Origin: Haplodiscus bocki
Taxonomy: Eukaryota
DNA: 64,000 nucleotides
Assembly: GCA_965655095.1 (NCBI GenBank)
Contig: OZ296655.1
Coordinates: 61,690,001 to 61,754,000, forward strand
Reading direction: 5' to 3'
Below the pieces are notes generated by a model. The model was not told the DNA's origin, made no database searches, and saw nothing but the letters and a program-made list of their open reading frames with translations. Of this stretch, positions 12,700-63,800 are shown piece after piece. The position numbers were made by a program, and so were the translations under genes. The first letter of the stretch is position 1; every line of letters starts with the position of its first letter.

Positions 12700-13140
12700 T
12701 TTACGGTTTCACAGAGTTTTAATCCACAATCAATTCAAAAAAAAACAACAAGCAATAAAAAAACACACCAAGTTTGGAGCAAGAGAGCAAGATCGAACTG
12801 GATTCCAGAGTAGAGCTTCAAATGAGAGACGATAATTTCTCAACAAATTTTGGCAAACTCCATCTTCAACCTAGTGACGGAACGCATTAGACTTGTTATC
12901 TAAGGAAATACATTTTGATTTTCATGGGTATCATCGCCCTAAAACTTTTTTCAAATATAGTAAAAGCAATACATGGAAAAAGTGTTTTTTTCTGAAAATC
13001 AAATTCAAAAATTCAATACGCTCTGTGGTAGTTTTTGTTTGCTCATTATTTTTTCTATACTCTAGATTTAAATGGATTTCACAAGAGCAGTGTTGCATTT
13101 GTTTTACAGAAAGTAACCGAAAACAAAAAAAACGTTTCAA
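12700..13140 (+). pseudogene. Adenain-like cysteine protease relic
   Basis: GKLHLQPSDGTH*TCY...FDFHG...QKFNTLCGSFCL (His, Asp, Gln and Cys motifs); homologous to 42910-43290. Confidence 0.75.
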
Positions 13141-26747: not shown

Positions 26748-26749
26748 AA

Positions 26750-27502
26750 ATGCCACATTTTCAATCCGGAACAGTGACTAACAGACCGGAGACCAACGGA
26801 AGAATATTCCACCAATCCCATGTGTTGTCTGGCAGCAACCTTTGGAGATTTTAGTGGATAGTTCAAGTTAGCTAATATTCAAATTGACTCTACTGCTGAA
26901 ACTAATTAAAACACGCATACGCCCCAACTAAAATAAAGAAATGGTGTAGAGTCACAAACGTCGTCAATAAAGGAAATCTCACTTCAAAATCCGGAACCTC
27001 TACGGAACACTTCCGAGAAATTGATACTAGTAGCAAACAAGTAGTGTGCCTCAATAACTCCCAAAACTTTCAAAACGAAACCCAAGAAACGACTAAAGGC
27101 ATCACAGCTGAAATGTAACGGAGATGACAATATTTGCCTTCTCACAAAAACAACTTCACCGCTGTTTGGGAAACGCTTCTGAGAGATGAGACATGGACGA
27201 GCTGTATATATCAATGTCCTCCATCATAGTACCTGAAAAGTGTACCTGATTCTGGATTTCGTAAACTATCTAATTACACAACCCATTTGACTAGGAGTAT
27301 ACTAGGCACAATACGAGAAGTTTGCCCACAAAGTTTCCATAAAAGAAGGGATATATGACGGAATGGATACGGATCATGATTGTAGCTACAAACGGGTCAG
27401 GAATTGGAAGCATCAAACCCCTAATTCTACCAAACCCCGCAGAACAAAAATGATCTACGTCATCACCTGAAGTCGAATTGCAAGGAAACTTACAGACATT
27501 GA
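26750..27502 (+). pseudogene. pol: pol remnant: pre-protease region fused to the extreme C-terminus of integrase
   Basis: 27100-27270 resembles 63320-63496. 27340-27502 (YDGMDTDHD...PKSNCKETYRH*) resembles 58953-59100 (YDGTHTD...PKPNCNDDYRY*). RT, RNase H and the rve core are absent. Confidence 0.75.
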
Positions 27503-27929
27503 ATTTTTGAATCTGTCCTAGTATGTTCCACGGAACGCCTACGTACACTTTCCGGAGATCCTAGGAACGTGTTATGGAACTCATACGGAGCAAATACGTA
27601 CCTATTCCTGGAAGCTCTTCACAGTTCTCCTCGAACAAAAACGATGTTTTGACTACTAGTTCTCAATGGATATTGGTGATTGCAATAGTGAATTTCTGAT
27701 GTCACTTTCTGAGGATAATCCTTGTCGACTGACTCATTTTCCACTCATTCTCTCCCAGATTGCAACTCGACAAAATTGTGTGCAAATAGAACAATACAGG
27801 CAAAGAATGGACTGAATGAGAAAAACTTAGGAACAGCCCCAGACAACCCCAGTATGGACAACATCAACGACATTACGGCTTCCACCCAGGAGAAAACATG
27901 GCGTGATACGGAACAATTCCGGAAAAAAT

Positions 27930-29184
27930 ACGGAACGTACCACAAAAGTGTCGCCGCCGATCCAGTACTTCATTCAACTCTGCCAACATAGAATATACAT
28001 TACACACACAATACTAATTGCCCAAACACAAACCAGACGGGAATGCCCACTATTCATTAGAAGATTCAGCAACTGAGCCTTTCCTACCACACTGACGGAG
28101 CGACAAAAACAAACAATCTAATGCCCAATGGCATGCACAACAGTGGCAGCAGGATTCGGTGACGAATTAATCTAAAAAGCAAAAATGAGGTGAAATCTGG
28201 AACCAATGAGGAACAATACTAGGAAATTCCTCATTCGAATATGACTATTGCCCTCATCAAAAGCCTGCTCCATTAGCTCCCAACTTCGACTACGACTGTG
28301 TACAACTTCAAGGACGTCAGACTGAAGCCCGCAATTAGCGATACCAGGCGTCTGACCATCAGTTTCCACCCCAGTCGGTACGTCATCTCTTCCGGAAACT
28401 CTAGGAGCAAATTCGGCATCACCTGCAAAAACGAGGATAATAAACCACTGCCCCAAAAACAAATCCACAATGTATATTAGAGAGTGTTAAACTCTCAAGA
28501 GCAGCCGTGAGAGAACTTTTCTAGAAGCCCCCTTTCCGGACATACTCCTCCGAAGTGGGAGCAACAACTTCAGACTCGGATCACGACCGAGTCACTCCGA
28601 GAAGTCCCGGAGAAACCCGGACGAACAAATGGTTCCCCAGAACAGTTAGACGCTAAAACACAATAGCCTCACGAAGTCATCTTCATGAAGATGTGCGCAC
28701 TGATTACTGGCTTATGGAAAATATGAGTGGCCACCATATTATTCCAGCAAACCAAAAGCTAATGAGGTATGAAGATTTGAAAATTCACATTGCGGAGGTC
28801 GAGCGGTGTCAAAAACACACTCAGACAAAGTCAGTCCCTCCAATCCTTTTCCCGGAAAATCTCTGAGAAAATGAAACACTGCAACTCAAACCCGGAAATC
28901 GCCAACGCGGGAGCACCACAAACAACATCGACATCCTAACCCTCGATGTGTGTCTCCCTCCCCGCATCTTCATCAGTTTCGCAATGATCTCCAACAACAA
29001 GCTATTCCAGAACTTCACCCGGACTCCCGGACTCTCCTTGCCCATATCCACAAGACATTTTCTTCAGGGGCACATGGAGGTTAATAGAATTGGCAAAATG
29101 AGTTCTGGCAGAGCCTACAACTGACACAGCATCTGCTTGAGATGAAGTGATCTCCTCATGCAGGATCACACTTTTCTCAGACAT
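27930..29184 (-). pseudogene. Antisense multi-exon accessory gene of Gypsy-A (5' exons kept, core deleted)
   Basis: MSEKSVILHEEITSSQAD, DAEFAPRVSG, LMEQAFDE and MLAELNEVLDR match exons 1-5 of 53988-58552, with splice-site-like motifs at the same positions. Confidence 0.75.
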
Positions 29185-29705
29185 TTCATGGAATAGCAAC
29201 ACTTGACTATCAAATGATGGATTTACATGCCTAAATCATTAAATACTTACTCATTATAAATTTGATGAAATTGTCTGCCAGCAATGACATCAGCATGATA
29301 TTTCAAGGAACTGTTGACGAGCGAAACTAAGCGTTTCCTCATTCCGAAACTTTGCTTTCCTTGACTTGTGTACACAGTAACACCCTCAAATTCTACTCAC
29401 TATTACTTAACGTCATCAATTTTACCTTTCAATACGGAAACTACAAAGAATTTCCCAGCCAAAAAAAAACTACGGAGAATCTACGTATGTACTCCGTCAC
29501 TTGACAAAGTACTCTTGGTGAATTCGTCAACTCTCATCGGCGAGAATAATTCTTCACTTATGTTTCGAATTGGTACCGGCGATTGGTTATCTTGTGAACT
29601 CTGGACAATTGTGATTTCTATCTGGGACAATCATCGATGAGCAGAGGGCATCGAAAACAGAAAAGAAAATTGACCATGGGAATGTCCTTTCACAAAGAGG
29701 GGGAG

Positions 29706-31248
29706 TGTCGCAGTATATCCGCGAAGCCTACGAGCATACAGAAAGAAAAGGACATCCCCAGATTGCCTGAAAATTAGAAGAAACTCTATCGATACTTTAG
29801 ACTTTTCTATTTCCATTCATATATTAATATTGCAGTAATATATCATTGCTTTTACATGTAGTTGATACGTATCAAATACGTATTACTCCCAAGTATACTT
29901 TCATACAAATTCTACTTTTTTTATACGTAGCATTCCCGTGTACTGCACCAGATTGGGACGCAACTTTTACGTAACGAACACGTACCTACCTAGCAGCTAC
30001 TCTAAGCTAGGAATGAAAATTTTGTTACGTGCGCGTTACGCCGCTAACGATTTGGTGACGTCACAAAACTTTCAACAAATCCGCTGTGCCTTACGCTGTT
30101 TCACTTTGGACGGACAGGGGACGTCTACGTAGCCACCAGAATCATTCTCCTCAGTAGTACTGCGGAAGGCAGCGCTACAAGCGGCTACGTAGTCGCCACG
30201 GAACGCTCCGGCCAAAGTGAGGCGTGAGCTAGTAAAAACGTGGAACGGTCTAAGAAAAAGCCTATTTTCGTTCCAAAAGTGAAAATAATCGATGCAATAG
30301 TATTACCAAGCATGTAATTATGATTTTCTATGATTATTTTAGTGTATTTTATTTATTTTGGTACATTTTTCAATACGTTCCTCTGATGGAAAAACTTTTG
30401 GATCATTTGTTTATGTTAATATTCATTGTGTCGGCGCGGGAATAATCACTTTGATATCCATTTCCGACTGATCAGACCCGTAAATTTTCCGTCGAAAGAT
30501 GGAAAAGACGCGGTCTGTAAAGGAAGGAATGGAGGGAAAGTTGTTTATTTCCCGCCAGAGTCGGCATATTTCCTTTGTAATTATTATCCTCAAAGCACTT
30601 TTCCCTACTTTGTACCTTTACTTGGCGTGTAAACAATTATGTTTCCCGCCACGGAAAATGTATAAATAGGAGAAACGAAAGTACTAGAGGGAGAGATTCC
30701 TAAAATCACTTTGATTATCAGTTGACAGTACTGATTGCGACTAGTTGGTTATTCTAAAGATTAACATTTTTTATTATAACCTCAAGTTCATTAACAAATA
30801 CAAACTAATTCAGTCGTCATAACTGCATAGCATTTTCTCTTCAAAAAATGGCAACGTTGAGAAACAAACGAAAGTTGGCAGTCGTTACAAGAGAAACACA
30901 AGAGGAACATCCTAGGAACGGCCAGACACGAAACCCGTCCGTTCCTAGAATTAACGAGGAATATATCACACAACTTTCTGAGGAGATAGAAGGCAGTGTC
31001 AGTAAAAACTGTCCCAAGAGTTCAGCAGGACAGAGTCCCGCATTTTGTTGCTTTGTCTAAATTAGACGAGTTTCTTCTGAACCAACAGATACGGACGCAC
31101 TCCGAAACCGTTCCGGAAACATTCCGAAACACAAACGTGGATAACCAGGGAACGAAAGAGGACGACTCCATGAGTGACCCTCATCCTGAAGCAGGCCTCT
31201 TCCGCAGCCAGACTACACAAAACTCTGGCCAAGAAGTTGGTCCTTACA
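29706..31248 (+). repeat. 3' LTR of Gypsy-A
   Basis: Direct repeat of 24104-25646, preceded by the PPT and followed by the TSD. Confidence 0.95.
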
Positions 31249-33449
31249 GGAACTTTATCTCAAGTAACGCTATCTTGTCTGCCAACCATCTGAGCTAACA
31301 GCTCCAGCTCAGATAAAACTGTGAAAAGACTCGGATTGAATTCCCAGAGCCAAAGTATCCATAGAGTGGGAAAAACTCAAAAAAACTTCAAGTGGTAACT
31401 CTCTTGGGCTCAATGAGCAGCGAAACATTTTGAAACCCGTCTTAATTCTGTTACTTTGCTAGTATCAAAAAACTTGAAAAATTCGCTTTCTGGCATACTT
31501 TGGCTCGAAGATTGGCCCATTAAATATTAGAGTTGATCACTTCTCATCGCAATGTGAGCTAAAAATGGCAATTATCCAGAAAAATCTAGTGGAATAACTC
31601 GAAAAAGTGAGATTTCAATAAAAAATAGCATCGTGAATTAAAGAAAGAAACAAAGCCGTTTCAGAGAACATCAGTGCTGAATCAGCGTTTTTCGGAGATT
31701 TTCAGGTAAAACGCTGAAACAACGGTGATCGGGGCTGATTGTCTGAGACCTTCACTCAAACAGTTTAGATACTTTCAAATTATCAGAGAACTCATTTGCA
31801 GAAATGGACTGGTTTGTTAATGCCAATGAAGCAGCAGACAGCGAGTACCTGATGATCTTTAACAGTCGGTTTCTCAATCCATACAAAACTTCGCTTGCTT
31901 CATCCTATTGCATTGCACTGTCTGGATTGGGAAAAAGAATGGTCTAACAGCCAGTTTAAGTGAATACAAGTTGAATTTTTCGCAGAATCAGTGTTCTAAC
32001 TTTCGTATTTACACGCCCGTAGATATGCAACAAATTCATTCTTTCCAATGCATCTGGTCTTCGTCCAACCTTTAACTATAAATTTCTTTTAAATTTCGTT
32101 TAATTCTCTCATAAACTTGAAAAACATCAGAGTTTTTGTACCATGGTCTCTTTTCTCCGGTAAGTAACTTCTTTCGTCATTTCGAACAATTCTGTTTTCT
32201 TCAACCTTTGCAGCTTGCTTATGTCCCAAGAAGTTTCATCAGGCATTCTTCGATAATTCTTGTAAAAGTACTCTTTTTTAGTACATGTATTCTTTATATG
32301 ATGGTTTATCTAGCCACGTACCTTCATGGTGCCTCTGATTTTTTGCATAGGTGAGAATTTCTGGATTAGAACACCTTAGATTGATCTTAGATATGCAAGA
32401 GCAAGGAAGTGTAACAATTCGAGAAAATTTGCTAACTTTTTTTATTATTTTCAAGAGCCATTCACTGCTAACTGGAAACTTGATATTTTGCTTTTTCTCA
32501 AAAGTGTCTGAAATGACATTGCATTCTCGGTGCAGCTGTATGATCAATCCGCACTAATGAAAAATGCTGAACAGTAAAACGCGTATAGAAAGTATAAGCT
32601 GCCAGTTGTCGATTACTGAATGTAAATCAATCACGCTATCTGACTACTTCAAAATTCAAGTGGAATGTTTGCAATTCATCAACGAGGGTGCCAGACCTTC
32701 AGTTTATCAAACAGGAGTTCTATTTCAGTCGTCCCATTCGAGACGTTTAATACTACAATTTTCTAAAACTGTTTTCTCAAAATTCTGTTTCATCTATAAA
32801 AATTGTCGCATTAAATATAACGCTAACCGTGCTAAAATTAAATGGTGACGTAATGGAAATTTCAAAAAAAACTCAGCAGTTTAAAGCAATGTAGTTGGAG
32901 AACGATAACAAAGTTGGAATTGCACACTTCAGAGTTTCAAAATCTCGTTCACATTCTCAGTACGAATGATTATGAAACTTTTTACATTGATAACGCCTGA
33001 TGCTCCGGGCTAAACGTTTTTGTTTCATCAAACAGTAGACCCTAAAATCCTAAATGTTCATTTTTTTAAGTTTTATTATGGGATCACCTTTATTGGTGCT
33101 CCTTGGCGCACTGCTTACCACATTTGGTCAAAACCTTGAAAAATTCAACGACTCAGAAAATTGAGCTGCCAGCCACCAACGGCAAGAAGTCAAAACTCGC
33201 CTTCTCCCTCACTGGATACCACCAGCAAGCAACTCAAAAACCTAGAAAATCATTTCTATAGCTTTGGAATTTTCCGAGTTCAGAAAATTCAATTCATCAG
33301 AAATTTGGTTTCTTCACACATGGATAACTTTTCTCACATCTTGGGGCAGTTCAACTATTCAAAGACACTTGAATAATTCCTATCCGCAGAGAAGAATATT
33401 GCGAAGACCTTTCTGTTGCAAGTCAATACGCATCATTTTTAACAAAACA

Positions 33450-49910: not shown

Positions 49911-51280
49911 TTAACGGAAAGAAAAAAAATGAAAAATCTTTCTAATCCTTCGTGAAACCTTTCTAAAAATCTGGGAAATTTTTACATGCAATTTTGTCAT
50001 AATTATGATTCGTGCAATTGAAAAAGATCAAATCTAAAAACTGAAAAAAAAAGATTCATTTGTTTGTTAAGTTTTTTGGAATAGTTGCAATGTGGTAAAA
50101 TCACCTGTTTCCACTAAAAATGATGAAAAAAGATAGAAAGCTGTTGTTAGTTTAATTCAGTCCATTGAGACTGGACTTTTGCAAGTTAATACACTTGGAC
50201 TGGTTAATGTTCAACTAAGAGTGCTGGTTAGGCTATTCCCTGTCTTAAATTAGAGATGGTTATGGTGCATTAGCTCAGATTCAGTGGTGTGTCCCATCGG
50301 GCGGGACTTGAGATGATGCACCGGCGAACCTGTACAAAAAAGTATAAAATTACGTTCTTTACCAGGAATGCTCGATAGAGTTGTCCAGTAAAGTTTTTTT
50401 CATTAAAAATACTCCAGCATAAAATAGAGCGAAAATATCGTCTGCCTACCACTGCTATGAAGTATGTAAATAGAAACATGTTTTTTTGTAGGTAATGTAA
50501 AAAGGAATCAATGCGCTTAAATCACAATAGTTTTTTTTCTTTTTTTGGCTGAGAAAAAATTTTGACTTGCGTCTGAATCTATATTGCGGATTGTATCACT
50601 GCTGATAAACGATCAAAAATCAGAAAAACACCATCAAAAAGCACTATCCCAGAGCCATCGTTGGACTAATGCGTTCGGGGAAAATCTTTGCTCTCAAAAA
50701 GTATGAAGGATTTTAGACACAAAAAGTTTCTTTTTTCGAACGACACATCGAAAAGCCTTTCACAAATTACCAAACACATGCAAAGTCTAAAACCTTTTGG
50801 CAAACTCACAGCTTCAAACATGTGGAAGCTGTTAAGGATTAACTTTCGAATCTCAAAAAACTAGAAGGCCTACATTTAGTTCCGTGATAAACATTTGTTT
50901 CAACCTAAAGTTTTCCATGATCTTGCTAAATGCTCTGCACCAAAAGAAAATTACAAAAGTAAACAACGCTTCGACAACGCCGTTTATTCCCGGTTCTAAG
51001 AAGAAGCGTCTACACACGGTCTGAAGTAGCAAAAATTCCGAGAACACGGAAGGTTTTCAGTAGTTTCTTCCATGAAAACTAAGCCCGAGGCACCGAATTT
51101 GATCGCAAAAATGACCGAATCAAAATTATAATGATACTCTGCGTGGAATGAGCTTTCCTTGCAAAACTTCCCTAGTTCCCTTTGGAAAAATTAATGCGCG
51201 CCACTGCCGAGTGTGCCCAATTTTGAATTCAACAACTGAATAGATTACCATTCACCAGCCATGAGAAACCCAAAGTGTCT

Positions 51281-52956
51281 TGTCGTGGCCATCTTCTGGG
51301 CCAGAGTTTTGTGTCATCTCGTTGTTGAAAATGCCAGCTTCAAGATGAGGGTTACTCTGGGAGTCGTCCTCATTCGTTTCTTGGCTTATACTAAAAATGT
51401 TCCGGGACGTCTCCGGAGCGGTTCCGGAGTGGCCCTGAACTAGCGGGTTCATGAGGAAGTCATCAAGACGAGCTGATGCACCTGTTATGCGGTTTTCCAT
51501 CCTGCTAAACACTTGCGACAACTTTTTTGTAACTCTTCCCTCAATTTCCTCAGAAGCTTGAGTTATGTAGTCTTCTTGTGATCTGGGAACTTTCGAGTTT
51601 TGTGCCAAACTGCTTCTAGGATGTTCCTCACAGTTTTCTCTGTTTAAGGCTGCCACTTTCTTTTTGCTTCGGGTTGCCATTTTTACGGGAAAAGTGTTAC
51701 TCAGTGATAAAAAGTTGATAGTATTTTCGTGAAGGGAAAATCAAATTGGTGTGTACAGTTTTCAGTAGAGGAAATAAAAAATGAATCAAAACTGGTTAAT
51801 ATCGTCAGTACAACAGAACACAAGTTTAAGAGTATAAGATTCTGGAAAGGCTCTCAATGTTCTCAAATTGTACTTTCATTTCTCCTATTTAAACCTTTTC
51901 CTGACGGGAAGCATAATTGTTTACACGCCAAGTTATGGCACAAAAAGGGAAAAGTACTTCATAAAGTGTAGCCTTAAAGTTAAAAAAGGCCGGCAGTGGC
52001 GGAAAATAAACAACCCTTCCATCCATCTCTTACCTCTTAGTACGCGCCTTTTCCATCTTCCGACCAAAATGGGCGGTCCAAATCCGTCAGGGATGGACAT
52101 CATAAATGGACGAAGGAAAAATATTTTCTTAGTTAGAAAAATGAAAAAAAATAAAGTGAAAATTACAGAATACATGACTTTAAACATGTGGATTATATAG
52201 AAAACATAAATAATCATTTCCCTCGTGCTCACTTCATCATTGTTAGTAACGGTTCTTTGGTCTTTACTCTTCCGAAAAGAGGAGAAACTAGAAGCACTAC
52301 TAGTTTACTCTTCAATCGTACGATTAGGAACTAGTGGTTTCCGGATTTTCCCGTATTCACTAGTAGTGGTAGTAGTCTGTGTTCCAATGAGGAGTGATTC
52401 CGGAACCATTCTGAATTCACTACACCAGGGCATTAAAAGAATAGTATTAATGACGTCACCAGACTAGTAGCGACGGAGCGCGTACGGAACAAATATTCAC
52501 TTCGAGAATCAAGACACTTGAAATCAGTTGTTGTGCTTTTAGCATCGATTTAATCGTAATTTCTAATTAAACTGCATTTCCTGCAATCAATCAAACCGTC
52601 AGATTTAATTGAAAAAAAGTGGATTTATATTTAATAATTAAGTAATTATTTTAACATAAGAATAGCTCCTTTTAGGTTAAAAATACTCTATGAATACTTG
52701 TTTGTTCCGTAGCGGTTCCGTCCTAGTCCGGATCAGTTTGGTTCAGTAAAAATACGTACCCATAAATATGTGCATTGGTAGGGATACGTTTTATACACAT
52801 AACCGTATATATGTACAACAGTTAAAATTACATGTTATAGTGATGTTATAGCTAGAGTTTGATTAAAAGTATGTAATGTTTGAGTTTTTGCTGAGCCTTA
52901 GGGTGTCTTTTCGGCTGATAGGGGCCGGCCGCATGCCTCGAAGGTGTACTGCGACA
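51281..52956 (-). repeat. 3' LTR of Gypsy-B (1676 bp) containing an open 133-codon gag N-terminus
   Basis: Begins TGTCGCAGTA (as Gypsy-A does) and ends GGCCACGACA. The ORF MATRSKKKVAALNRENCEEHPRS... from 51680 is homologous to 25246. Confidence 0.92.
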
Positions 52957-52988
52957 CTCCCTCTTTTTGGGAAAAGACATCCCCATGC

Positions 52989-53587
52989 TCAGCTTCCTTC
53001 TTTCTCTTCATGGAGGCGGCGGTATGGAGGAAGGGCTCGAAGCGATAGATACGTTTCTTGGCTCATTGGAGTCAAAGGTGTCGCTTGAAGAAATAACTCA
53101 AAAGACTCCTCTGGGCTCATCATCAGTATAGAATGTGGCATCATCCGTTGTTGTGTGCGTTGTCTCCCAGCCTTCAATGGCACTCACATTCATTGGGGGT
53201 GTCGAAAAGAGATGGGTTAGATGGCTCCGTTGATTGGGGGCTGTACTCTTCATCCGCTCGAATCACGGCCATAGTAGCCAACACATTGAATGGGTTGGGC
53301 GGCAAGTTGAGATCATTGAGGCTTAGTGGCACAATTGGATGTTGACTGCCAAACCTATATGGCATTGTGGGTTGATTGGAACCCGAATCAATTGTGACGA
53401 TCTGTGCATCCAGCGAGGCGACGGAGGAGACAGTAATTGTCTCCCTTGCCATTGCCCCTGATAATTGTGCTGAATTGAAAACGGCCGGAGTATTATTCCG
53501 AGCCAGACTACTTTCTTCTAATGAGCGCTCCACATAGAAAACATCCGATTCTGTGGATGAAGATTCCAGAGAGAGAACTGGGTTCAT
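52989..53587 (-). CDS. Extra sense-strand ORF before the PPT; acidic/Ser/Pro-rich, unknown function (probable frameshift ~53180)
   Basis: MNPVLSLESSSTESDVFYVE...ETITVSS...QIVTIDS...; no signal peptide or TM segment, so not env-like. Confidence 0.5.
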
Positions 53588-53987
53588 TGCAGTTGTTAAA
53601 AACAAGGAAGTTTGAGAGACATTATGAACTGCAAATTTGACGAAGTTACTTGAAGAAGTGATGATTAAAACAAAATTATTCTGCATTCGTCGCCAGGCGG
53701 GAAATGCTTTGAAGTTCCCGCGGTATCATTCTAATTGCTGAAGTTGAGTAGTTGGCGGTATAACTGAAGTTGACGAATTCTAAGCAAATCAATGAATGAA
53801 GTTTTTTAAAAATTAAGAAAGTTGAGTTTCTTTCCTCAATGTGTCCTTGAAACTAATATGATGACGTTATTGCTGGCAGACAAATCGGTCATAGTAAAAA
53901 GTAAATTAATAATGAATTTCATGAACGAAAATATAAAGCCATCATGTGATAGCTTATTAGCCACGTTCTTCGAATTGAACTGCAAGT

Positions 53988-56900
53988 ATGTCAGGAAAAA
54001 GCGTCATCTTGCTTGAGAAGTTTAGTTCGGCTCAATCGGACAATAAGTCAGTGGTTCAAGCTGTTGTTTCCTTTTCCCATTTTGATGTCCCCGAAGAGAA
54101 AAATGCTGGAGAGAGAGGCGAGGAGAGTCCTGTGGGAGGTCCAGAGGGACCAAATGAAGTAGGTGGTGTGTGCGAGATAGAAGCTGGCACTGAGGCAGAT
54201 GTGGAGGACGAAGATGAGGACGTTGATGTTGTTGGTCGCGTTGACGAGGTTGAGGTCTCTGGGTACGAGTCTGAGGGATTCACGCTCTCAGAAATCCTTC
54301 GTCGAAAAAAACTTTCGAAGAAGAATCTGTCCGAGGGTGTCGTTGACACCGCTCACCTTCCACAATGTGAGTTTTCAAATCTTCAACATTTACCACTAGC
54401 CCTGCTATTAGAATTTCTTTGCTGGCCACTCATTGAATTTTATTAGGCTAGTTGTGCTGCGCGCGCTGGAACATGAATATGACTACGTGAGGCTCTTGTG
54501 TTTTAGTGTGTGATCGCTCCGGAGAACAAGCGGTTCATTCAACTGAGCCTGGATTGCGTCGGACAGACGTGTCTGGTTCCGAGTTCGAGGTTGGCGCGCA
54601 CACTTCAGAAGAAAAAGTTAAGAGAGAGAAGAGTCGGACAAAATGCGCTCCAAAGAGTCCTCTCACGGCTGTTCTTGAGAGTTGGTTGCTCTCTATTCTA
54701 AATTGCAAGTTTTTAGTCGTATCAATGGCTTATTTTCCTTCTGTTTCCAGGTGATGCCGAAACGACTCTGGGAGTTTCCGGGAATGAAGATGCATCTGCC
54801 GACGTGGAGACTGGTGCGCAGTTGAAGGGCGTCACATTGTTGTTACCAGGAGCCTGGTACCGTTGGCTGGGGCCCCAGCATGATGTCCCTGATGCTGTCC
54901 AGAGTCGAGGTTGGAGCCAGGAGTTGTTGGAGCGGGCGTTTGATGATGGTAATACTCGTCTTCAAATGAGGATTTTAATAGTATTGTTCCATGTGGACTC
55001 CAAATTTTTACCACATTCCGTGCCTTTTAGATCAGTTTGTCACCGATTTTACTGTCACTGTAATTCGTGCCACTGGTCATCAGATGGTGTCTTTGTGTCG
55101 CTCCGTTTGTGAGGAGGAGAAAGCACAACTGCTGCCTCCCTTAATGAATAGTTAGTATTTTTCGCCTCAATCGGGTTCAACAGTTTTCGTGTTTGGTGTA
55201 CAGTATACGCCTTTATGTTGACAGAACTAAATGAAGTGTTGGACAGGTTAAAACAAGGGCCATCCCAAAGTCCACAGAGAGTTGAGACGTCGGAAACCAG
55301 TGGAAATGAGACGGACACTAGCAAACGGCGCCGAAAATTTTTAACCAAGAAGACTTTCCGGATGAAGAAAGTGTACGCGGCAACCGAGCATGGCAGGTTT
55401 TTTGTGACAGTACGATCAGACGCTGCCAAAATGCCAAGCCATTTTTCCTGTCGGGTGTGCCGCAGAAATGTCTTTGTGCTCACACTTGGACATCAAGAAG
55501 TGTTGCGACATTCTCAAGGCAGTCGTCACTTTGGCCGTGATCAGCGCTTGCGTCTGGAATTACCTGGGTGGCGCGTGCTAGATTTCCACGGAAATCCAAT
55601 AAGTGAGGATGAGCTGGAGCGTCAGAGGGAGAGTATCAGAAAAGGTCCTCTTGTGGTACATGATCGTGAGCATCCATTTGCAGAGGACTTGATCACCGAT
55701 GAAGCTGATGTCGTTGACCCTCAGTTGCCGGTTCTGACAAAATTGTTACGCTTGGTGATGCGCTGAGGATAGGAGGCAGCTTTAAACTGATTGAGCAGCT
55801 GTGGGCACAGTTGGTGCCAACCGCCGGGCCAGTCAATACTGAAGTAGCCTGGACACGTGACGAAGTTCTGGTTAGTTCCGTAAATTTCCGGAATCACCTC
55901 GTCTCAATCCCGATTCACAACATTTTGCTTTTAGTCAATCATCGTTACTGGAATGTTGCCCCAAATTCTGTCTCGCGTGTTTTGTTGGGCTAAGGCTCAC
56001 CACTTTTTCAGCCTTGAATTCCAGGAGCGTCGTGTGGCATTGTGGGCCTTCGTGCGCACGTGCGAGAAGGACACTATCCGTCGGGTTGCCGTGGCGGTTT
56101 CAGACCGCTTCTCCATTGATGCCACATAGGAGTTGTCTCTGTTTGTGTCGGTCATGGCTGCTGTGGGTGGTTCGGCGTCCCTCGTTGCAGATTCTGGTGG
56201 GTTGCATGTGTTGGCCGACACTTACTGCGAACATTTGGGAAGTGGGTTCAGCCGCCAGCTAGTAGAATACCCAGTGTTCGATCTGCGTCTCCTGAAACAA
56301 TGCTTGCAAAAAATGTCGTCTTCCGTCTTTGGATCTTTGGATCCATTCTCGATGACGGAATTTATTGTCACGTGTTTCAAGGGGCAAAGGATCAGGTCAC
56401 GTTCCAGTCTTTGTCATACCGTCATCACAGGAGAGCTGTCGATGCCGTCGCTGGTTGAGGTCGTCAGCAACACCGTGGGTCTGTGGCCTCTCATCGTGGC
56501 CTACCTTACGGAGACTGGTAGACAGACCAACGGCGACAAGTTATTGGTTTAATACAATCTGCACTTTTATTTCAGTTGCACTTTTTCACACCTTCCTCTT
56601 GCTGTTTTCTTTTAAAAGAAGGGAATTGTTGGCTATTCCGATATCGACCAGATGGCAAGATGCAAATTCCGCCTGTTCCATCTGATTCTCGGGATCTGTA
56701 AGTCCAGCTTTTTGCACATTCCCCATTTGGTTCACGTTGGTACGTATACATTCCGGAAAATTGGTAGGAAATTCTAGGAAACCTGTGGAACCATTCGCAT
56801 TTTTTCCTCGTTTTGGGACACTGGGCTGAATCAAGAAGTATCCAATTTTATACCCATTTATTGAGGGTTTTGGGGTAGTTGCGGTACTTTCACGATTTCT

Positions 56901-58552
56901 GAAGCAATTTCCAGGCTTTGCACCGTCTTTTTGGGTGTGATTCTTGTTAGTTGCCACCTAGGATAAACTAGGAACTTGTAGTAGCACTCCTAGTTGATTC
57001 CGCATTTCCACGGGGCAAAATAGTAAATTTTCCGTATCACTTTTGATTTTGATCCTCATTTGGTAGTCAGCTCCAGGGCTGGGGGGAGTATCCAGTTTCT
57101 ATCATTCTCTGGTCATTGTCTGTGTTGTTTTAGTTGCACACAGTTTCACCGAATTGGACTCTGGGCATGCCGATCATGGCTATCTGGCATTTGGGGAGCT
57201 CTCCCGATTTGTGTACTGTTTACTTCAAAAGGTGAAACGGAGTAGCGATTTGCTCCTGATAGAGAAGTCAGAGGCGTAAATGGTCCCGAATCATTCGTGT
57301 TTTGGAGCCATCGCAGTGGAGCAGTTCTTGGAAGGGACCCGTCTGTTATCGTCCCTGGAAAAAAAAAAAACAACAGCTTCCTCCAAAAAGAGTTCCGCAA
57401 AGACAGTCGTCGCTTCCTTGAGGATCTCGTAAGCACCATCCTCTCTACAGTGGCCGCGCGTTCTCCAGTTGGGCAGGAATTGACCTGCTTCTGTCCTGAA
57501 ATTACCATTGAAGGTGTCGACTATTCAACTGTCTACATCCTCGGGCAACTACTGGATGGACTGCCTGAACTTGGCTGCGTTAGGGGGTCAGAAATCGAAC
57601 CTGCAAATGCTGAATTCCACTCTTTCGTCCGCGAGCAGTGACAGGTGTAATCAAGTGGCAATAGGTCTCGTGTGCCAATTAATAGCATCTTTGCTTACTG
57701 CAACCAGCCTGGCTTCTGTCCTCGGCAGAATTTGCACAAAGTTAGTATTATGGGGCTTTAAAATCATCTCGATGTTCTTCATGATTTAACAACATGTGCT
57801 GCTTTCAGATTCTTCAGTTGACAGCATTAGTGGTGAAGGGTCCCTCAGAGTTGCATCCCGTCTTTACTGTGTCTTTCGATGGGGTTGCAGTCATTCAAGA
57901 GAAAGTGAAGGTGGCAGTGGCATGTGTGCAGGATTTTTTGCGTCAACCTCTGTTCACGCAGAGAAACTTTTTCTCCGAGATTGGGATTAGCATGCTGAAC
58001 ACTGCCGTTACTGCCGCAGATGTTGTTCGAAACAGTTCCAAGTTTGATCCTTGGGGAGCAATTGATGTAGAGGTGGGCCCTGTAATTGCAGATCTGAAGT
58101 CCTGCCGAGAAAATCTTGTAACACGAAGGAAGGCGGTCAAGGATACACGGGAGCGTTGGTTTGGTGCAGAGACTGTTGCACCATCAGCTGTTGGTGAGGC
58201 TGCATCCCGCACAACTGTCCGCATCTCTGATGTTGTAGAGGTAGGAGATGTGAAATATATTAAGGAGCATGATAAGCTTGGTCTCCCTTGTTGCAGTCGA
58301 TCTGTGTCAGCTCCCGGGAAGAAAAAAAAGAGGCAAGTGCCAGTGAGTCCGGGCGTTGCGAAAAAAAAACAGTTTTCTGTTGAAAGTCCGTCTGCTAGCC
58401 GTCCTTCATTTGACGCTGCTCTTGAGAAAAGTTTCGAGAAGTCGGGTGCGGAAGAAGTAGTCGTGATTGCCGTAATGCCCCAGTTTTCCAAGGGTTATCC
58501 CAACAACAATTTAATTACATTTATGTATAGACTTCTCGCATTTGAATTTTAG
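53988..58552 (+). pseudogene. Spliced antisense accessory gene of Gypsy-B; hAT-transposase-like protein with a BED-like zinc finger
   Basis: GT-AG introns at 54367-54506, 54681-54750, 54949-55030, 55151-55203, 55871-55934 and 57741-57808 all join exons in frame. Motifs CRVC-x15-H-x5-H, FFSLEFQE, LWPLIVAYL, NLHK/ILQLTALVVKGPSE. A few stops and frameshifts are present. Confidence 0.8.
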
Positions 58553-58952
58553 TAAAAGTTTGAATTCAATTAGAGTAGCCGTCTTTTGTGTATAGGTAAA
58601 ATGAGTAGGAAAACTGTCGGTGTACAGGAACTTTCCTCAGAATACTAGGAATTTTTGTATGTATTCCGTTTTGTATCCGGAATCAATTTTGGGTAGCTTT
58701 TCCGGAAAGGTTCCGGAAACGATCCTTATATCATCTCAGGATATATTAGGGCGTTGCGATGAAGATTCAATTCCCGGTGTCTGCAAATGCCAAAGTTGTT
58801 ATGATTCGGTCTGTAGTGTTCAAGAGTTACTTCAGAAAAGTTGATGAGCACTTGAAAGAATATGTAGGCTTTCCGCATATCAGTTCAAAAACACATTCCT
58901 AGACTTTCCGCAAAGTGTACGTATGCGTTCCGTAGACGTTAGTGGGACAGGG

Positions 58953-61900
58953 TCAATATCTGTAATCGTCATTACAATTTGGTTTTGGTTTATGACGTGC
59001 ATCATATTTTGAGCTGCGGTGGTCGGTAGGCGTACGGTCGGGTTGCCTTACACTAGTATCCGCATCAGGCTGCATGTAGTTATCCGTGTGCGTTCCGTCG
59101 TATGATCTGTCTGTCTGAGGGGTAAAATCTGGGGAAGTTTCTGGTATGGTTCCCAGAGTGCTCCTCCTTTCATCAGCTGCTTCTTCAGATCGTACTGTGA
59201 TTTCGGGTGAATTAAGTGTTACCAGATTATTGTAATCGCTATCAAATATTGGCATCTCATAATCACACCCCCATGCTCTGGCGTACAAGTCATCTAGTTT
59301 AATGATAACTTCCGGGTCTGGTTGCCATTCACGTGGTGTGATTGGTATTTCTGGTATGGGCTGGCGGGGTGTGAATTGACCGTGCCTCATTCGATGAAGT
59401 ATTTGCGTCCTATTGGTGCCAATTTTGCGTACCAAATAATTTTTGTTCGGTAACGTCTTTTCAATAATATAGGGTCCAATCCACCAAAAATCTGTAGCGG
59501 GAAGTTTGCTTCCTTGGTGATCTGCTTTCGCTGTAGGATGTAAACGTATTCGGCCTGTTTAAGTTTCGAGGCATTGGCTTTTTTATCATAATACGTTTTC
59601 TATCTGATATAAGCTTGCATAGCACTTTTGCGGACATCTTGGAAAACCATTTCCGTCTGTTCAAGCACATCTTGGGCGGTTTGTGAGTCCGGAGAGGGAA
59701 TTTTCTGTGGAAGAATACCCATTATTAAAGGAAGGATATTGTAAGGAATGCGTCCATGATATACTTTGATCGGTTCACAGCCGGTACTCGAGTGATGAGA
59801 TGTGTTGTAATTAAGGACCGGAATGCCGACGTACTAATGCCGCAATGATATCCGCTCGCCTGTCTCTATCTTCAATGCTTGTTTGATTGACTCGTGATAT
59901 TGCTCAAGCAGCCCAATCGTTTGATCGTGCTATGTAGTGGCGTGCTTTATAGTAAAGCCAATGACGCCGACCACTTTCTTAATTACATGGGACACAAAGG
60001 CTGTGCCTTTATCTGAGATAAGTGTTGTTGGCAAGTAGCCGTGCTTAGTCATGCTGTTAATCAAGACGTTAGCAATTGCTTTGGAGTCCTGATTTGATGT
60101 CCGGTATGCAAATATTTAGCTGGAAAACACATCCATGGCTGTCACAATGTATCCATAACCAGATGGCGTTAATTCGGGCACCAAATCATGTTGCATGGCG
60201 TCTTCTGGCGCAATAATGTACACGTTCGGGTTTTAATGGGGAGAGCGGGTGACTCGAGGATCAATCCGTGATTCTCTAAGGCATTGCTCACAAGACATAA
60301 CCCACTCCCTGATTAATTGAGCCATATTTGGTTAATAATACTTTTCTCTGTATGCAATTATCGTTTTAGTAATTCCAGGATGTTTTCCAAAATATCCATG
60401 GAGACTCCGGAGTACTTCATTAACTAGCTGCTTGGGTATGAGAATTTGGTAGTATTTGACACTACCAGTTTTTTTGTAATATTTCCGGAATAGAAGTCTA
60501 TCTTTGCGGATAATGCGTTCCTCATTTGCATTGTAGTGCCTAAATCGTCTGTCCATTGTCAATAGCACATCATCATTTGGTTGGCCAAGTATTTTGAAAT
60601 TTAGATTTTTCAGTACTAGATCGGCATCTTGCTCTACTCGTATTCGTGCATTTGCTTTGATTCCATTAATGGAATACGACGTAGTGTTTCCGTCAATCTT
60701 TGTGAATTCTTTGATACTTGGCTTCCTTGAGGATGGTTCCTGATTTACTACCCCTTCTGCTGCCTTTTTCCGAGATTGCACTTTTCGTTCCAGGATCTGT
60801 TTCTCGGTCTCACCTTGACCATCTGCTTGCGTGAAGGAGAACTGTTCTTCATCGGCAACATCCGAGGAAGATGTTGTCACCTTTATGGGTGTTGTTTGTA
60901 TATCCTCCTGGATTTTGAGATGGATCTTCTCCGTGACTTTCAGTTCTAGTCTGGAGACAAAGTCAGCTGCTGTGTTGACTGGACCAGCGATATTTGCTAA
61001 TTTAAAGTTGAACTGCAGCACATAATCACAAGGATGGTGGAATAGCTTTAGTCTGGAAAAATCGGGTGACGGATTTTTAGTCCGTTAAGACAATCGTTGG
61101 TTTTGATGCTTCCCACAGAATATGTGCGAGCTCAAGAAATGCCATGTAGAATGTCAAAAATTCTTTTGAGTAAATTGACATCTTGAGTTGTGCGGGGGAA
61201 GAGACTTTTGATCCAAACGCGATAGGGGCGTACGTTTTCCTGTTTGATTGAATCTTTTGGTCCGGGTTATCTTCAATCATGAGGGCATAGCCAGCGCTTC
61301 TCAAGCTTGCATCGGTCATTAAGACTAGCTGTTTCCTGGGAACAGTTTGTTTCAGTGCTAGCTCGGAAGCATTGCTCAGTGCTTTGTTTACTGAATCAAA
61401 GATTTTTTTCGATTCTGAGGTAATATTGATTGGGCTTCTGCTTTTAAAAGTTTGTAGAATGGATTCAGCTTTTTAACCATCCTGGGAATGTTATTTCTGT
61501 AAAAACTTACAAATCCCAGATGGCGCTGCAAAGCCTTTTTGGATATGGAGAATCTCAATTTGCGCAAGAAATTCTGAATTTTGTGAGATTGTGGTGATAC
61601 TCCCTCAGATGAAATGGTTCTTCCTAGGAATTCAAATTGACTGACTCCAAAGTGGCACCTTTCATATGTCAATTTTAGTCATGCCTAGCGAACGTACTTG
61701 AAGACTGCCCGAATGTTCCGGGTAACATCCGTAGCGTTATTAGCTGCAATTTCAAGGTCATCCACGTATTGAGCACATTGGTCAGCCTTGACAACTGGGC
61801 CTAAGTACTCGCGCATGAAGCTTGAAAAAGCAGACACAGATCGGCTGAGACCTTGTTCAAGTCTCTTGTAGGCAAAGGTTCTGCTAGAAAGATGAAATGC

Positions 61901-63800
61901 AAAATTAGCATTTCCACCGAACGTTGGTCCGCCATATGCAAGCAGTGATATAATTGGGAGCAGTCGAGCTTGCAGAATAGTGACTTCCCTGCCAGGTGTT
62001 GTGCTGCATCTGACAAAGCGCTGACTGGGTGATTATTGTTAGTGTAATCATCCGCAATCAGGGTGTTGATCTGCCTAAGATCCACAAGGAGACGTAATTT
62101 TCAGTTAGGTTTTCTCTGTGCAAAAATGGGACTCGCGTATTTTCAGAACGGTAAAACTGTGATGATCCCATATTTATGCATAAGGGCTACCTCAACAATT
62201 AAGTCTTCTTTCAGGTGGATCGTCATTGGTAGGTTATGGCTGTAGACAGCTTTATCCTCCTTTGGTGTGAGTTTCACCTTGAATTCTGTGTTCATTCCGA
62301 TATTCATTCTATGTCTAGCAAATATGTCCTGATAGTCAACTAGAATATCTTCGACTGCTTGTTTTTCAGTTTCTGTGAGCAGTGTACCTGTCCAACCAAA
62401 TCGCTTTAAAAATTCCATTCGTGATTCTGTGTCATCTTTTGGATTCCGTTTTTCTTCTAGTGGCAGTTCACGCAGCTCTTTTAGGAATCGTGTCTGAATT
62501 GGGGTATGATCCTCTATGTTGCCAGGATTTTCGGGTGTAGGAAACCAGAAAGTATTGTTTTGCTGGTCTGGTTTATTCATTCTGAGTAGCTCAGTCAAGT
62601 ATGTAATCAGATCTAGGTCACCTTCAGGAATCATACTAAGAATTGCCGTGTCTACTGGTTTAATAAACTTGGATTGCTCTGGAGTGACTACGGAGAAGTC
62701 GGCAATTTGTGTGTTCTTGTAGATTTTATAAGGTGTTTCCGTTGTGTTGGCGACTCTGACTTCTATCTTTCTGTCGATTATGATTGAAATTGAATGGGAT
62801 ATTGTGAGACTCGCGGAACTTTTCGGTGAATTTTTCAACTGGAATTACGGTCCCTGTTGTATTCTTATCCAACAGGTGATCAACAAATGCTGTGATTGCC
62901 TTTGTTGTCGTTTGTGGTATTGTTATGCTGTCGTGGATGAGAAGAGATTGGGACTTCGCACTCGTTTGACTCGATGCACTTCTGTCGTGCGTTGCCAAAT
63001 GTGGGAAATGGATGAGGCCATGTGTAGTATCGATGACCATACTGTTATGTTTCATGACGTGCAACCCTATGATAGGTCCTGTCAGATTCTTCATTACGAC
63101 GAAATGTTCTGCAAAGATGTGATCTGCAATGTCAAATTTGAGTGTGGCTGTTGCTAATGGCTTTTCTAACTGGCCATTTGCTACTTGAATTTGAAAATTA
63201 GGAGGGTCATCGATTTTAAGGATATTAGATGGAGCTTGTTGTTTAATACTCTCCAATTCATTCTGAGCTATTGCACTACCATAGGTTCCCGAGTCAACAA
63301 GGGAATCTTTTGTTGAGCCATTCTCAAAATCCAGAGGGACATACAACAATTCTTTCTTTCGTTTTAGGACAATTGCGGAGGATAGTGGCATGTAGAGTTC
63401 ATTGGTAATATCATCCCTCACAAGTCGGTTTTCAATTTGTGAAGTTTTAATTTTGGGAGGGGAAATGTTGTCATCTCCATCGCCATAAGTTGTCATGTCA
63501 GTTTGTATTCATTGGATTTCAGGTTGTTGTTCCTTGGAATCATTGGGGCATTGTACTGGCATGCTCCTAGTTTGGTTTTCCAGGAGCGATTCCCAATCAG
63601 ATCCAGATACTTGGGATGAAGTTCCTTTCATTGGCGACGTTTGTGATTCTATATCACTTCTCTGTCTGAATTCTCTGTGTTTTTGTGAGTTTCAATAATC
63701 AAAGTTTTATGAATATTAGTTAAATGAGTCTCCTGGGGTTGCTGCCAGACAACTTAAGGGAGTGGTGGAAGTTTAGTAGTCTATGGTCTGTCAATCGCAG
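58953..63800 (-). pseudogene. pol: Gypsy pol (protease, RT, RNase H, integrase), frameshifted
   Basis: LVDSGTYGSAI (PR); DLRQIN, KLDCSQLY, QYVDDL (RT); MTDASLRSAGYAL (RH); LHGYFGKHPG, DVFS, ISDKGTAF (INT). Confidence 0.95.

What the first reader, a model, noticed from the sequence alone, without database searches (positions are those of the whole stretch)
53988..58552. Gypsy retrotransposon carrying a multi-intron antisense gene that resembles a dead hAT transposase
Seen: between pol and the 3' LTR, on the strand opposite gag-pol, short ORFs are joined by canonical GT-AG introns. The first four introns (54367-54506, 54681-54750, 54949-55030, 55151-55203) are all phase 1 and give one open frame from ATG 53988 into a C-x2-C-x15-H-x5-H finger (HFSCRVCRRNVFVLTLGHQEVLRHSQGSRH). 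Phase-0 introns 55871-55934 and 57741-57808 also preserve frame. Known: hAT transposases have the order BED finger, FSLxxDE first catalytic strand, CxxH, RW...WxxLxxY, then a C-terminal NLxxL...P-S dimerisation region. The same order appears here (WTRDEVLSIIVTGMLPQILSRVFCWAKAHHFFSLEFQE...FVRT; LWPLIVAYL; NLHKILQLTALVVKGPSE), but the catalytic Asp and CxxH are replaced. An acidic N-terminal extension and a basic NLS-like tail (PGKKKKRQ) are added. Antisense introns survive reverse transcription because they are not spliced from the genomic RNA. Inference: an LTR lineage captured and domesticated a DNA-transposon protein as a nuclear DNA-binding accessory factor (anti-silencing, LTR transactivation or integration targeting). 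I do not know of this arrangement having been described.
Basis: partly seen in the sequence, partly recalled or inferred. Interest (0 to 1): 0.92.

Follow-up and report, generated by a model that had tools for sequence, protein, structure and literature searches.

The report
Retrotransposon family carrying spliced antisense gene
A large, old family of gypsy-type retrotransposons in this invertebrate genome carries, on the strand opposite gag-pol, a conserved nine-exon zinc-finger gene kept by selection. I could not show that it comes from a hAT transposase.

Summary
The arrangement is real. Window 51281 to 66773 (it runs 2.8 kb past the window end) is a 15.5-kb LTR retrotransposon with gag-pol on the minus strand. 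Seven full copies are colinear, so 53988-58552 is part of the element and not a nested insertion. The plus-strand gene has nine exons, not seven. The window copy is a pseudogene that loses frame near 55750. A young relative (L045, LTRs 98% identical) gives 1,006 codons in one frame across seven GT-AG introns, with only two stop codons. Diverged lineages keep the same layout, intron phases and CCHH finger. Non-synonymous change is far below saturated synonymous change (pN/pS 0.25-0.44), much as in gag and pol. The hAT origin stays unproven. Pfam, profile searches of PDB sequences and fold searches gave nothing, and two AlphaFold models were too poor to judge. The only lead is a weak language-model resemblance to ZBED5/DUF4371 clusters. 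No RNA data were available. Other first-stage notes report the same element elsewhere in this genome. The closest known parallel is the antisense ORFs of plant Retand/Tat elements.

The parts
51281..52956 (-). 3' LTR of the element, seen in the sense of gag-pol. Its 5' partner lies outside the window at extension coordinates 65044-66773 (L031:1044-2773).
   Evidence: The two LTRs are 89.7% identical over 1732 columns. A polypurine tract AAAAAGAGGGAG abuts this LTR and a TGG-starting primer-binding site abuts the 5' LTR. The flanking GTCT is duplicated. The boundaries are shared with six other copies.
52907..53686 (-). ORFx, a conserved sense-strand 3' ORF of about 225 aa. It overlaps the polypurine tract and runs into U3. 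It is truncated in the window copy (ORF 53174-53686).
   Evidence: It is 53% identical in amino acids between lineages (L045 7009-7677, L047 6917-7609). pN/pS is 0.29-0.31. It has no Pfam hit.
53988..54366 (+). Antisense gene, exon 1: start ATG and acidic N-terminal region.
   Evidence: The ORF is open in many copies. The donor GT is present in 24 of 30 copies. The motif SEGxTLxxILRR is shared with L045.
54507..54680 (+). Exon 2, after the phase-1 intron 54367-54506.
   Evidence: The homologous exon and phase are present in L045.
54751..54948 (+). Exon 3, after the phase-1 intron 54681-54750.
55031..55150 (+). Exon 4, after the phase-1 intron 54949-55030.
   Evidence: The donor GT is present in 30 of 30 copies. 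Also.
55225..55870 (+). Exon 5, the zinc-finger exon, after the phase-1 intron 55151-55224. In this copy it carries a private frameshift near 55750.
   Evidence: The acceptor AG at 55223-55224 is present in 23 of 30 copies. The exon is intact in L002, L023, L027, L045 and L047. The representative-protein search found 735 clusters at E<=0.001.
55449..55529 (+). C-x2-C-x16-H-x5-H zinc finger.
   Evidence: The Cys and His positions are conserved across lineages that are 36-60% identical. There are only marginal C2H2 Pfam hits and no zf-BED hit.
55935..56546 (+). Exon 6, the core exon (about 204-209 aa; predicted helix, three strands, helix, then further helices), after the phase-0 intron 55871-55934.
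   Evidence: It is intact at 209 aa in L009, L013, L021, L026, L045 and L047. The homologue search found 797 proteins. pN/pS is 0.38-0.41.
56619..56697 (+). Exon 7, a micro-exon (KKGIDGYxYxDQxARxKFRLFHLILEI), between intron 56547-56618 (phase 0) and intron 56698-57133 (phase 1).
   Evidence: The peptide is conserved in L009, L026, L044, L045 and L047. Its length (79 nt) and the preceding intron length (72 nt) are the same in L045.
57134..57740 (+). Exon 8, about 200 aa.
   Evidence: The ORF is intact in L008, L009 and L015. Homologues are present in L044-L047. pN/pS is 0.25-0.40.
57809..58552 (+). Exon 9, after the phase-0 intron 57741-57808. It is the less conserved C-terminal region with a basic patch (PGKKKKRQ) and the stop codon.
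   Evidence: It is 35-39% identical to L044-L046. pN/pS is 0.59-0.63.
58953..63496 (-). pol (protease, RT, RNase H, integrase), fragmented in this copy. gag continues beyond 63500 and past the window end.
   Evidence: Pfam RT_RNaseH hits 61077-61319 and Integrase_H2C2 hits 60332-61021. In L045 the hits are RVT_1, RT_RNaseH, Integrase_H2C2 and rve, with DUF1759 in gag.

Best explanation
Window 51281 to about 66773 is one old copy of a 15.5-kb Ty3/gypsy-type LTR retrotransposon with more than 1,000 copies in the genome.

Shown: every lineage of this group carries a nine-exon gene of about 1,150-1,190 codons between integrase and the 3' LTR. It lies tail-to-tail with pol on the opposite strand. 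The protein has an acidic N-terminus, one CCHH zinc finger, a conserved core of about 650 aa with no recognisable family, and a basic C-terminal patch. The gene was intact when the elements were active and evolved under purifying selection about as strong as on gag.

Inferred from established retroelement biology: the introns read CT...AC on the genomic RNA, so the spliceosome cannot remove them from it, and they are copied back into every new insertion. The gene must be transcribed from its own promoter at the 3' end of the provirus, running towards pol, and spliced as an ordinary cellular mRNA.

Inferred from the zinc finger, the basic patch and analogy: the product is a nuclear, nucleic-acid-binding accessory factor that serves the element's own replication, in regulation or targeting. 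This function step is untested.

The window copy itself is dead.
For: Element anatomy. LTRs, primer-binding site, polypurine tract and target-site duplication are present, and pol domains are identified.

The gene is integral to the element. Seven copies are colinear over 15.5 kb at about 83% identity, and no inverted repeats bound the region.

Gene model. In L045 (LTRs 98.1% identical), exons 2-9 give 3,018 nt in one frame through 7 GT-AG introns, with only 2 stop codons. Intron phases 1,1,1,1,0,0,1,0 and the 79-nt micro-exon are shared with the window family.

Conservation. Four further diverged lineages show the same layout (L044, L046, L047, L048), at 35-60% amino-acid identity.

Selection. 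For exons 5-8, pN is 0.22-0.33 against pS of 0.72-0.88. For gag and pol the ratios are 0.17-0.36.

Abundance. The first look found 1,154 candidate copies. There were 735 and 797 protein clusters or proteins for two of the exons.
Against: There is no transcript evidence. The only runs found were DNA, and they show no joints at the predicted introns. No promoter was mapped, and a poly(A) signal was seen only in L045.

All related sequences came from this genome or from one ENA assembly (ERZ26859043), which is probably the same or a very close species. Breadth across taxa is therefore unknown.

No domain beyond the finger could be identified, so the function rests on analogy. The pN/pS values come from tblastn-guided alignments of partly decayed copies with saturated synonymous sites.
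Confidence: 0.78

Rival explanations
1. One reading: it is a catalytically dead hAT (Buster/ZBED5-like) transposase, captured by the retrotransposon lineage and kept as a DNA-binding accessory protein. This refines the best explanation rather than excluding it.
For: Among named clusters, the ESM-feature look-alikes of the zinc-finger exon include five sets with DUF4371 or FAM200-ZBED5 RNase-like, plus zf-BED and DUF659. All are in the hAT superfamily, at scores 0.78-0.81.

Both AlphaFold runs predict helix, three strands, helix for the start of the core exon, with the acidic FEE at the end of the first strand, as in RNase H-like transposases.

That is a lead, not a test.

The length from the finger to the putative C-terminal helix region, about 650 aa, fits a hAT transposase.
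Against: There is no hit to zf-BED, DUF4371, DUF659 or Dimer_Tnp_hAT in any exon, nor among 120 core and 51 finger-exon sequences at E<=10.

Profiles of three exons found nothing relevant among PDB sequences.

Foldseek ranks Hermes only 22nd, at E 0.5 and TM 0.18, on a low-confidence model. VIA-align and the Atlas fold search give no transposase.

ESM features of the core exon itself gave nothing. The ESM scores are in a range that shuffled proteins reach a third of the time.
Confidence: 0.35
2. The gene is a passenger. A host gene or foreign element was transduced once into an ancestral retrotransposon and hitch-hikes without serving the element.
For: LTR retrotransposons do occasionally transduce host sequence. 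The papers searched did not describe a comparable gene in animal elements.
Against: A useless passenger of 4.6 kb should decay or be deleted in active lineages. Instead the exon structure, the reading frame and pN well below pS persist across lineages whose synonymous sites are saturated, at a level like gag and pol. The one short derivative seen, in the window at 24154-31300, has lost most of pol together with most of this gene, as a non-autonomous element would.
Confidence: 0.06
3. There is no gene. The open frames and GT-AG pairs were picked by eye from a decayed repeat.
For: The window copy is broken after about 470 codons.
Against: L045 gives 1,006 codons in one frame across 7 introns. 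Exon-length ORFs recur in hundreds of copies and in diverged lineages, ending at the same positions. pN is far below pS.
Confidence: 0.02

Closest known systems
Antisense additional ORFs of plant Ty3/gypsy Tat/Retand elements (maize Grande, rice RIRE2, Silene Retand; TRP28-domain aORFs), as described in PMC11963269
   Same: Both have a long region between pol and the 3' LTR carrying a conserved protein-coding gene antisense to gag-pol. The gene is present in nearly all members of the lineage. A DNA-binding, regulatory role is presumed. The paper reports nuclear localisation for the Grande protein.
   Different: The host here is an invertebrate animal, not a flowering plant. There is no Transposase_28 (PF04195) hit. 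The protein is much larger (about 1,150 aa) and is split into nine exons by eight spliceosomal introns. That paper does not contain the word 'intron'. There is also an additional sense ORFx overlapping the polypurine tract.
Retroviral antisense proteins (HTLV-1 HBZ, HTLV-2 APH-2), named as parallels in PMC11963269
   Same: Both are accessory proteins encoded on the minus strand. HBZ and APH-2 are reported there as nuclear. From my own knowledge, HBZ is transcribed from the 3' end of the provirus and has spliced isoforms.
   Different: From my own knowledge, those are small proteins with at most one intron. Here there are eight introns, about 1,150 codons and a CCHH finger. Expression is not shown.
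hAT (Buster/ZBED5/FAM200-type) transposases and their domesticated derivatives
   Same: Both have an N-terminal zinc finger followed by a region of about 650 aa. There is a weak ESM-feature resemblance of the finger exon to DUF4371 / ZBED5 RNase-like clusters. The start of the core is predicted as three strands and a helix.
   Different: No Pfam, PDB-sequence or fold match was found. The gene is carried inside a retrotransposon, with no terminal inverted repeats or 8-bp duplication of its own.

Membership tests
Ty3/gypsy (Metaviridae-type) LTR retrotransposon | Two long terminal repeats in direct orientation, flanked by a short target-site duplication | tested here: met
   LTRs lie at 51281-52956 and, in extension coordinates, 65044-66773. 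They are 89.7% identical and begin TG and end CA in the sense of the element. GTCT is duplicated on both flanks (4 bp exact, 5 bp with one mismatch).
Ty3/gypsy (Metaviridae-type) LTR retrotransposon | A primer-binding site next to the 5' LTR and a polypurine tract next to the 3' LTR | tested here: met
   TGGTGACAGGAGC abuts the 5' LTR and AAAAAGAGGGAG abuts the 3' LTR, read directly from the sequence. The cognate tRNA was not identified.
Ty3/gypsy (Metaviridae-type) LTR retrotransposon | pol domain order protease, RT, RNase H, integrase, with gypsy-type RNase H and integrase models | tested here: met
   In L045 the hits are Asp protease (weak), RVT_1, RT_RNaseH / RT_RNaseH_2, Integrase_H2C2 and rve, in that order. 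In the window, RT_RNaseH and Integrase_H2C2 hit.
Ty3/gypsy (Metaviridae-type) LTR retrotransposon | RT groups with Ty3/gypsy rather than BEL/Pao in a phylogeny | not tested
   No tree was built. gag hits DUF1759 (E 4e-7). From memory, that family is commoner in BEL/Pao elements, so the superfamily assignment rests on the pol models only.
hAT transposase or hAT-derived protein | BED-type zinc finger | tested here: not met
   A C-x2-C-x16-H-x5-H finger exists and is conserved. However, PF02892 zf-BED does not hit any of 51 sequences at E<=10. There are only marginal C2H2 models (ZN292-like, DHX34-like, E about 0.04-0.05).
hAT transposase or hAT-derived protein | RNase H-like catalytic core interrupted by an all-helical insertion domain, similar to Hermes | tested here: inconclusive
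   AlphaFold on the core exon alone gave pLDDT 49 and 46. Foldseek against PDB, VIA-align wide and the Atlas found nothing significant, with Hermes at rank 22 and E 0.5. The whole spliced protein could not be submitted. The newest Pfam core models (such as PF27073) are not in the library used.
hAT transposase or hAT-derived protein | C-terminal hAT dimerisation domain (PF05699), and DUF4371/DUF659-type regions | tested here: not met
   No Pfam hit appeared on exon 8 or exon 9 from five copies, nor on the core exon in 120 sequences. The exon-8 profile found nothing relevant in PDB sequences.
hAT transposase or hAT-derived protein | Catalytic DDE triad and CxxH motif | tested here: inconclusive
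   Without a validated alignment to a hAT, the equivalent positions cannot be fixed. The candidate first-strand motif is (F/V/L)EFEE, conserved across lineages.
Plant Retand/Tat-type antisense aORF (TRP28) | A conserved ORF antisense to gag-pol in the region between pol and the 3' LTR | tested here: met
Plant Retand/Tat-type antisense aORF (TRP28) | Transposase_28 (PF04195) domain and a flowering-plant host | tested here: not met
   PF04195 does not hit. Other notes of this scan, unchecked, describe the genome as a non-vertebrate animal.

The most novel reading that the evidence does not exclude
A retrotransposon lineage has domesticated a DNA-transposon protein for its own use. On this reading a Buster/ZBED5-like hAT transposase lost catalysis and was kept, introns included, as an antisense-encoded nuclear factor that steers transcription, silencing escape or integration of the element. 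Together with the sense ORFx, this would make a 'complex' invertebrate retroelement comparable in gene content to complex retroviruses.
Probability: 0.3. Interest if true: 0.82.

Novelty: new variant of a known kind. Interest (0 to 1): 0.62.

Why it matters
LTR retrotransposons are usually thought of as gag-pol machines. Conserved extra genes are rare and are best documented in plants. This case is an animal lineage with thousands of copies. It has kept a gene of about 1,150 codons and nine exons on the opposite strand, under selection comparable to that on gag.

That bears on three points. A retroelement can carry spliceosomal introns indefinitely if they face the wrong way on its genomic RNA. 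Such elements can encode sizeable accessory proteins. A provirus can hold two convergent transcription units.

The case also gives a concrete, testable handle on what a retrotransposon gains from a zinc-finger partner protein. If the hAT link is confirmed, it would be an example of one transposon class co-opting another's protein.

Tried and rejected
1. RNA evidence. The only four runs that hold the stretch are DNA contigs from one study. They cover introns and exons alike, and none of the 15 best-supported joints the tool displays (683 more are not shown) lies at a predicted intron. This says nothing about expression.

2. Pfam on every exon from the window, from older copies and from the young copy, and on 120 + 51 aligned sequences at E<=10, gave no family beyond marginal C2H2 fingers.

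3. ESM Atlas features of the core exon, tried twice, gave nothing usable.

4. Profiles of the core, finger and exon-8 alignments against PDB sequences gave nothing relevant.

5. AlphaFold2 of the core exon was run with 128- and 120-sequence alignments, first with a decayed query and then with a young one. pLDDT was 49 and 46. Foldseek PDB, VIA-align wide and the Atlas fold search on the better model gave no credible match.

6. The nested-insertion idea is rejected. There are no inverted repeats, and the region is colinear in all copies and lineages.

7. The 'second family' in the window (24154-31300) turned out to be a short, deleted derivative. It holds only remnants of the first four exons and short remnants matching exon 8 and the gene's 3' flank, so it could not serve for a full comparison.

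8. I looked for true hAT remnants in the 396 kb held, to build a hAT profile for hhalign, and found none. PF27073 is not in the Pfam copy.

9. A global exon-versus-intron nucleotide identity comparison was uninformative, because shuffled controls scored nearly as high.

Later related loci (L044-L048) came from look-ups of database proteins with the look-up of encoding contigs. All are from ENA assembly ERZ26859043, probably the same or a very close species.

Full report
**What the element is**

The window is G000:C8:61690001-61754000, from a 1.5-Gb genome. Other unchecked notes of this scan describe it as a non-vertebrate animal.

I extended the window by 10 kb (L031) and compared it with six other copies fetched with flanks. 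The repeat unit runs from window 51281 to extension coordinate about 66773. It is 15.5 kb long and colinear in all copies at about 83% identity. Its 1.7-kb terminal repeats lie at 51281-52956 and 65044-66773.

The two LTRs of this copy are 89.7% identical. In the sense of the minus strand they begin TG and end CA. A TGG-starting primer-binding site abuts the 5' LTR, and a polypurine tract (AAAAAGAGGGAG) abuts the 3' LTR. GTCT is duplicated on both flanks.

Minus-strand ORFs hit RT_RNaseH and Integrase_H2C2. In a better-preserved relative the order is Asp protease (weak), RVT_1, RT_RNaseH, Integrase_H2C2 and rve, with DUF1759 in gag. This is a Ty3/gypsy-type LTR retrotransposon with gag-pol on the minus strand. 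I built no RT tree.

The first look for the stretch 55215-56552 found 1,154 candidate copies, which is a lower bound.

**Whether the plus-strand region belongs to the element**

It does. The region 53988-58552 is colinear in every copy examined. No inverted repeats bound it. The same layout recurs in diverged lineages, as described below.

**The gene model**

With the first four, the window is open from ATG 53988 for about 470 codons. An alignment of 30 copies shows that most of these GT and AG dinucleotides are ancestral. The exception is the intron-4 acceptor, which is AG in only 2 of 30 copies. The ancestral acceptor lies 21 nt downstream, at 55223-55224, and is AG in 23 of 30 copies.

ORFs projected from the other copies show three further things:
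- The zinc-finger exon runs open to 55870, so the window's stop at 55766 is a private frameshift.
- The next exon (55935-56546) is an intact 209-aa ORF in several copies.
- An exon of about 200 aa occupies 57134-57740.

Between those last two exons lies a 79-nt micro-exon (56619-56697). It encodes KKGIDGYxYxDQxARxKFRLFHLILEI and is conserved in all lineages examined. A polypyrimidine-AG acceptor precedes it and GTAAGT follows it.

The gene therefore has nine exons and eight introns, with phases 1,1,1,1,0,0,1,0. Spliced this way, the window copy loses frame from about 55750 and is a pseudogene.

**Diverged and young relatives**

A profile of the finger exon found 735 clusters at E<=0.001 among 1.84 billion representatives. 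All of those listed are ORF fragments of such elements. The core exon found 797 proteins. A diverged query found 94 more, 35-71% identical to the window family's core exon.

I looked up the contigs of five of these proteins. All five contigs come from ENA assembly ERZ26859043, which is probably this species or a very close one. Each showed the same architecture: antisense exons in the same order, tail-to-tail with integrase (L044, L045, L046, L047, L048).

L045 is young, with LTRs 98.1% identical. Its pol has two in-frame stops. With the nine-exon model, its exons 2-9 give 3,018 nt in a single frame through seven GT-AG introns with good polypyrimidine tracts. The only lesions are two stop codons, TAA at 11205 and TGA at 12175. 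That amount of damage is about what 1% neutral decay would produce. The micro-exon (79 nt) and the intron before it (72 nt) have the same lengths as in the window.

**Selection**

Between L045 and two other lineages, exons 5-8 show pN 0.22-0.33 against pS 0.72-0.88. The synonymous sites are saturated, and the raw ratio is 0.25-0.44. Exon 9 is looser, at 0.59-0.63.

On the same pairs, gag and pol give ratios of 0.17-0.36 and ORFx gives 0.29-0.31 (earlier estimate). The gene has thus been maintained as a protein while the element lineages diverged.

The Cys and His residues of the finger are conserved across lineages. The spacing is C-x2-C-x16-H-x5-H.

**What the protein is**

- No exon hits any Pfam family. 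This holds for the window, the older copies, the young copy, and 120 core plus 51 finger-exon sequences scanned one by one at E<=10. The only exceptions are marginal C2H2 fingers. None of zf-BED, DUF4371, DUF659 or Dimer_Tnp_hAT hits.
- The newest hAT-core models, such as PF27073, are not in the Pfam copy used.
- Profiles of three exons find nothing relevant among PDB sequences.
- Two AlphaFold2 runs on the core exon gave pLDDT 49 and 46. Both predict helix, three strands, helix and then helices, which is compatible with the first half of an RNase H-like fold but is not evidence for it.
- Foldseek, VIA-align and the Atlas fold search gave no credible match. Hermes appears at rank 22 with E 0.5.
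- ESM features of the core exon gave nothing.
- For the finger exon, the nearest named clusters repeatedly carry DUF4371 / FAM200-ZBED5 RNase-like, zf-BED or DUF659. The scores are only 0.78-0.81, which the tool says shuffled sequences often reach.

I rate a hAT origin at about one in three. It is a lead worth testing, not a finding.

**Expression**

No RNA run holds the stretch. The four runs found are DNA contigs, and the joints the tool displays show none at the predicted introns. A canonical AATAAA follows the stop only in L045.

**Mechanism**

Shown: the anatomy, the conservation and the selection.

Inferred from established retroelement biology: the introns survive because they are antisense on the genomic RNA. 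The gene needs its own promoter at the 3' end of the provirus, and it converges on pol.

Inferred by analogy: the product is a nuclear nucleic-acid-binding accessory factor. The analogy is to the Grande protein and to HBZ, as summarised in PMC11963269.

**Comparison with what is known**

The closest described arrangement is the antisense aORF of plant Retand/Tat gypsy elements. These encode the TRP28 domain in the region between pol and the 3' LTR (PMC11963269).

The present case differs in four ways: the host kingdom, the protein family, the size, and the eight spliceosomal introns. Two full-text searches found no description of such a gene in animal elements. That does not prove none exists.

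Eight other first-stage notes report the same element elsewhere in this genome. They come from the same kind of reader and are not independent support.

**Limits and rule-bound omissions**

The alignment tool prints a majority line by itself, and I did not use it as a sequence. Read-throughs carry X at stop codons.

Noticed in passing
window 52907-53686 (minus strand); L045:7009-7677(-); L047:6917-7609(-): A second conserved extra gene, 'ORFx', lies on the sense strand between the start of the antisense gene and the 3' LTR. It is about 225 aa and 53% identical between lineages, with pN/pS about 0.3. Its motifs are DSDVFYVE, IVPPSLNDLNLPPNPFN and a C-terminal GGVSQHICEACGQ. It overlaps the polypurine tract and runs into U3. 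It has no Pfam hit. Expressing it would need a subgenomic spliced sense RNA.
   Followed up: partly
window 24154-31300: A young element of about 7.1 kb (LTR segments 97-98% identical) from a related family. It is a deleted, non-autonomous derivative. It keeps the gag 5' part and remnants of antisense exons 1-4 (28049-29193, minus strand), and short remnants matching exon 8 and the antisense gene's 3' flank. The first look found 3,104 candidate copies in the genome at about 90-94% identity.
   Followed up: partly
window 51252-51680 (minus strand), inside the 3' LTR: A 142-aa ORF (MATRSKKKVAALNRENCEEH...) starts inside the LTR and runs out of it. In the 5' LTR the equivalent ORF would read into the internal region, so gag may begin inside the LTR. 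Another first-stage note makes the same claim for the second element in this window.
   Followed up: no
window about 58690-58730; L047 about 12720-12790: Several copies of the palindrome TTCCGGAA (a TTCnnnGAA-type motif) are clustered in the short spacer between the two convergent genes, that is, between the antisense stop and the pol stop.
   Followed up: no
L031:4173-5891 (extension coordinates 68173-69891, just past the window end): An inverted LTR-like segment of 1.7 kb, 71-73% identical to this family's LTRs, lies about 1.4 kb beyond the element. It is probably a solo LTR or the edge of a related element.
   Followed up: no
L045:18190-19314(-); L047:17903-19468(-): gag of these elements hits Pfam DUF1759 (E 4e-7), while pol carries gypsy-type RT_RNaseH and Integrase_H2C2 models. 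The placement of the lineage deserves an RT tree.
   Followed up: no
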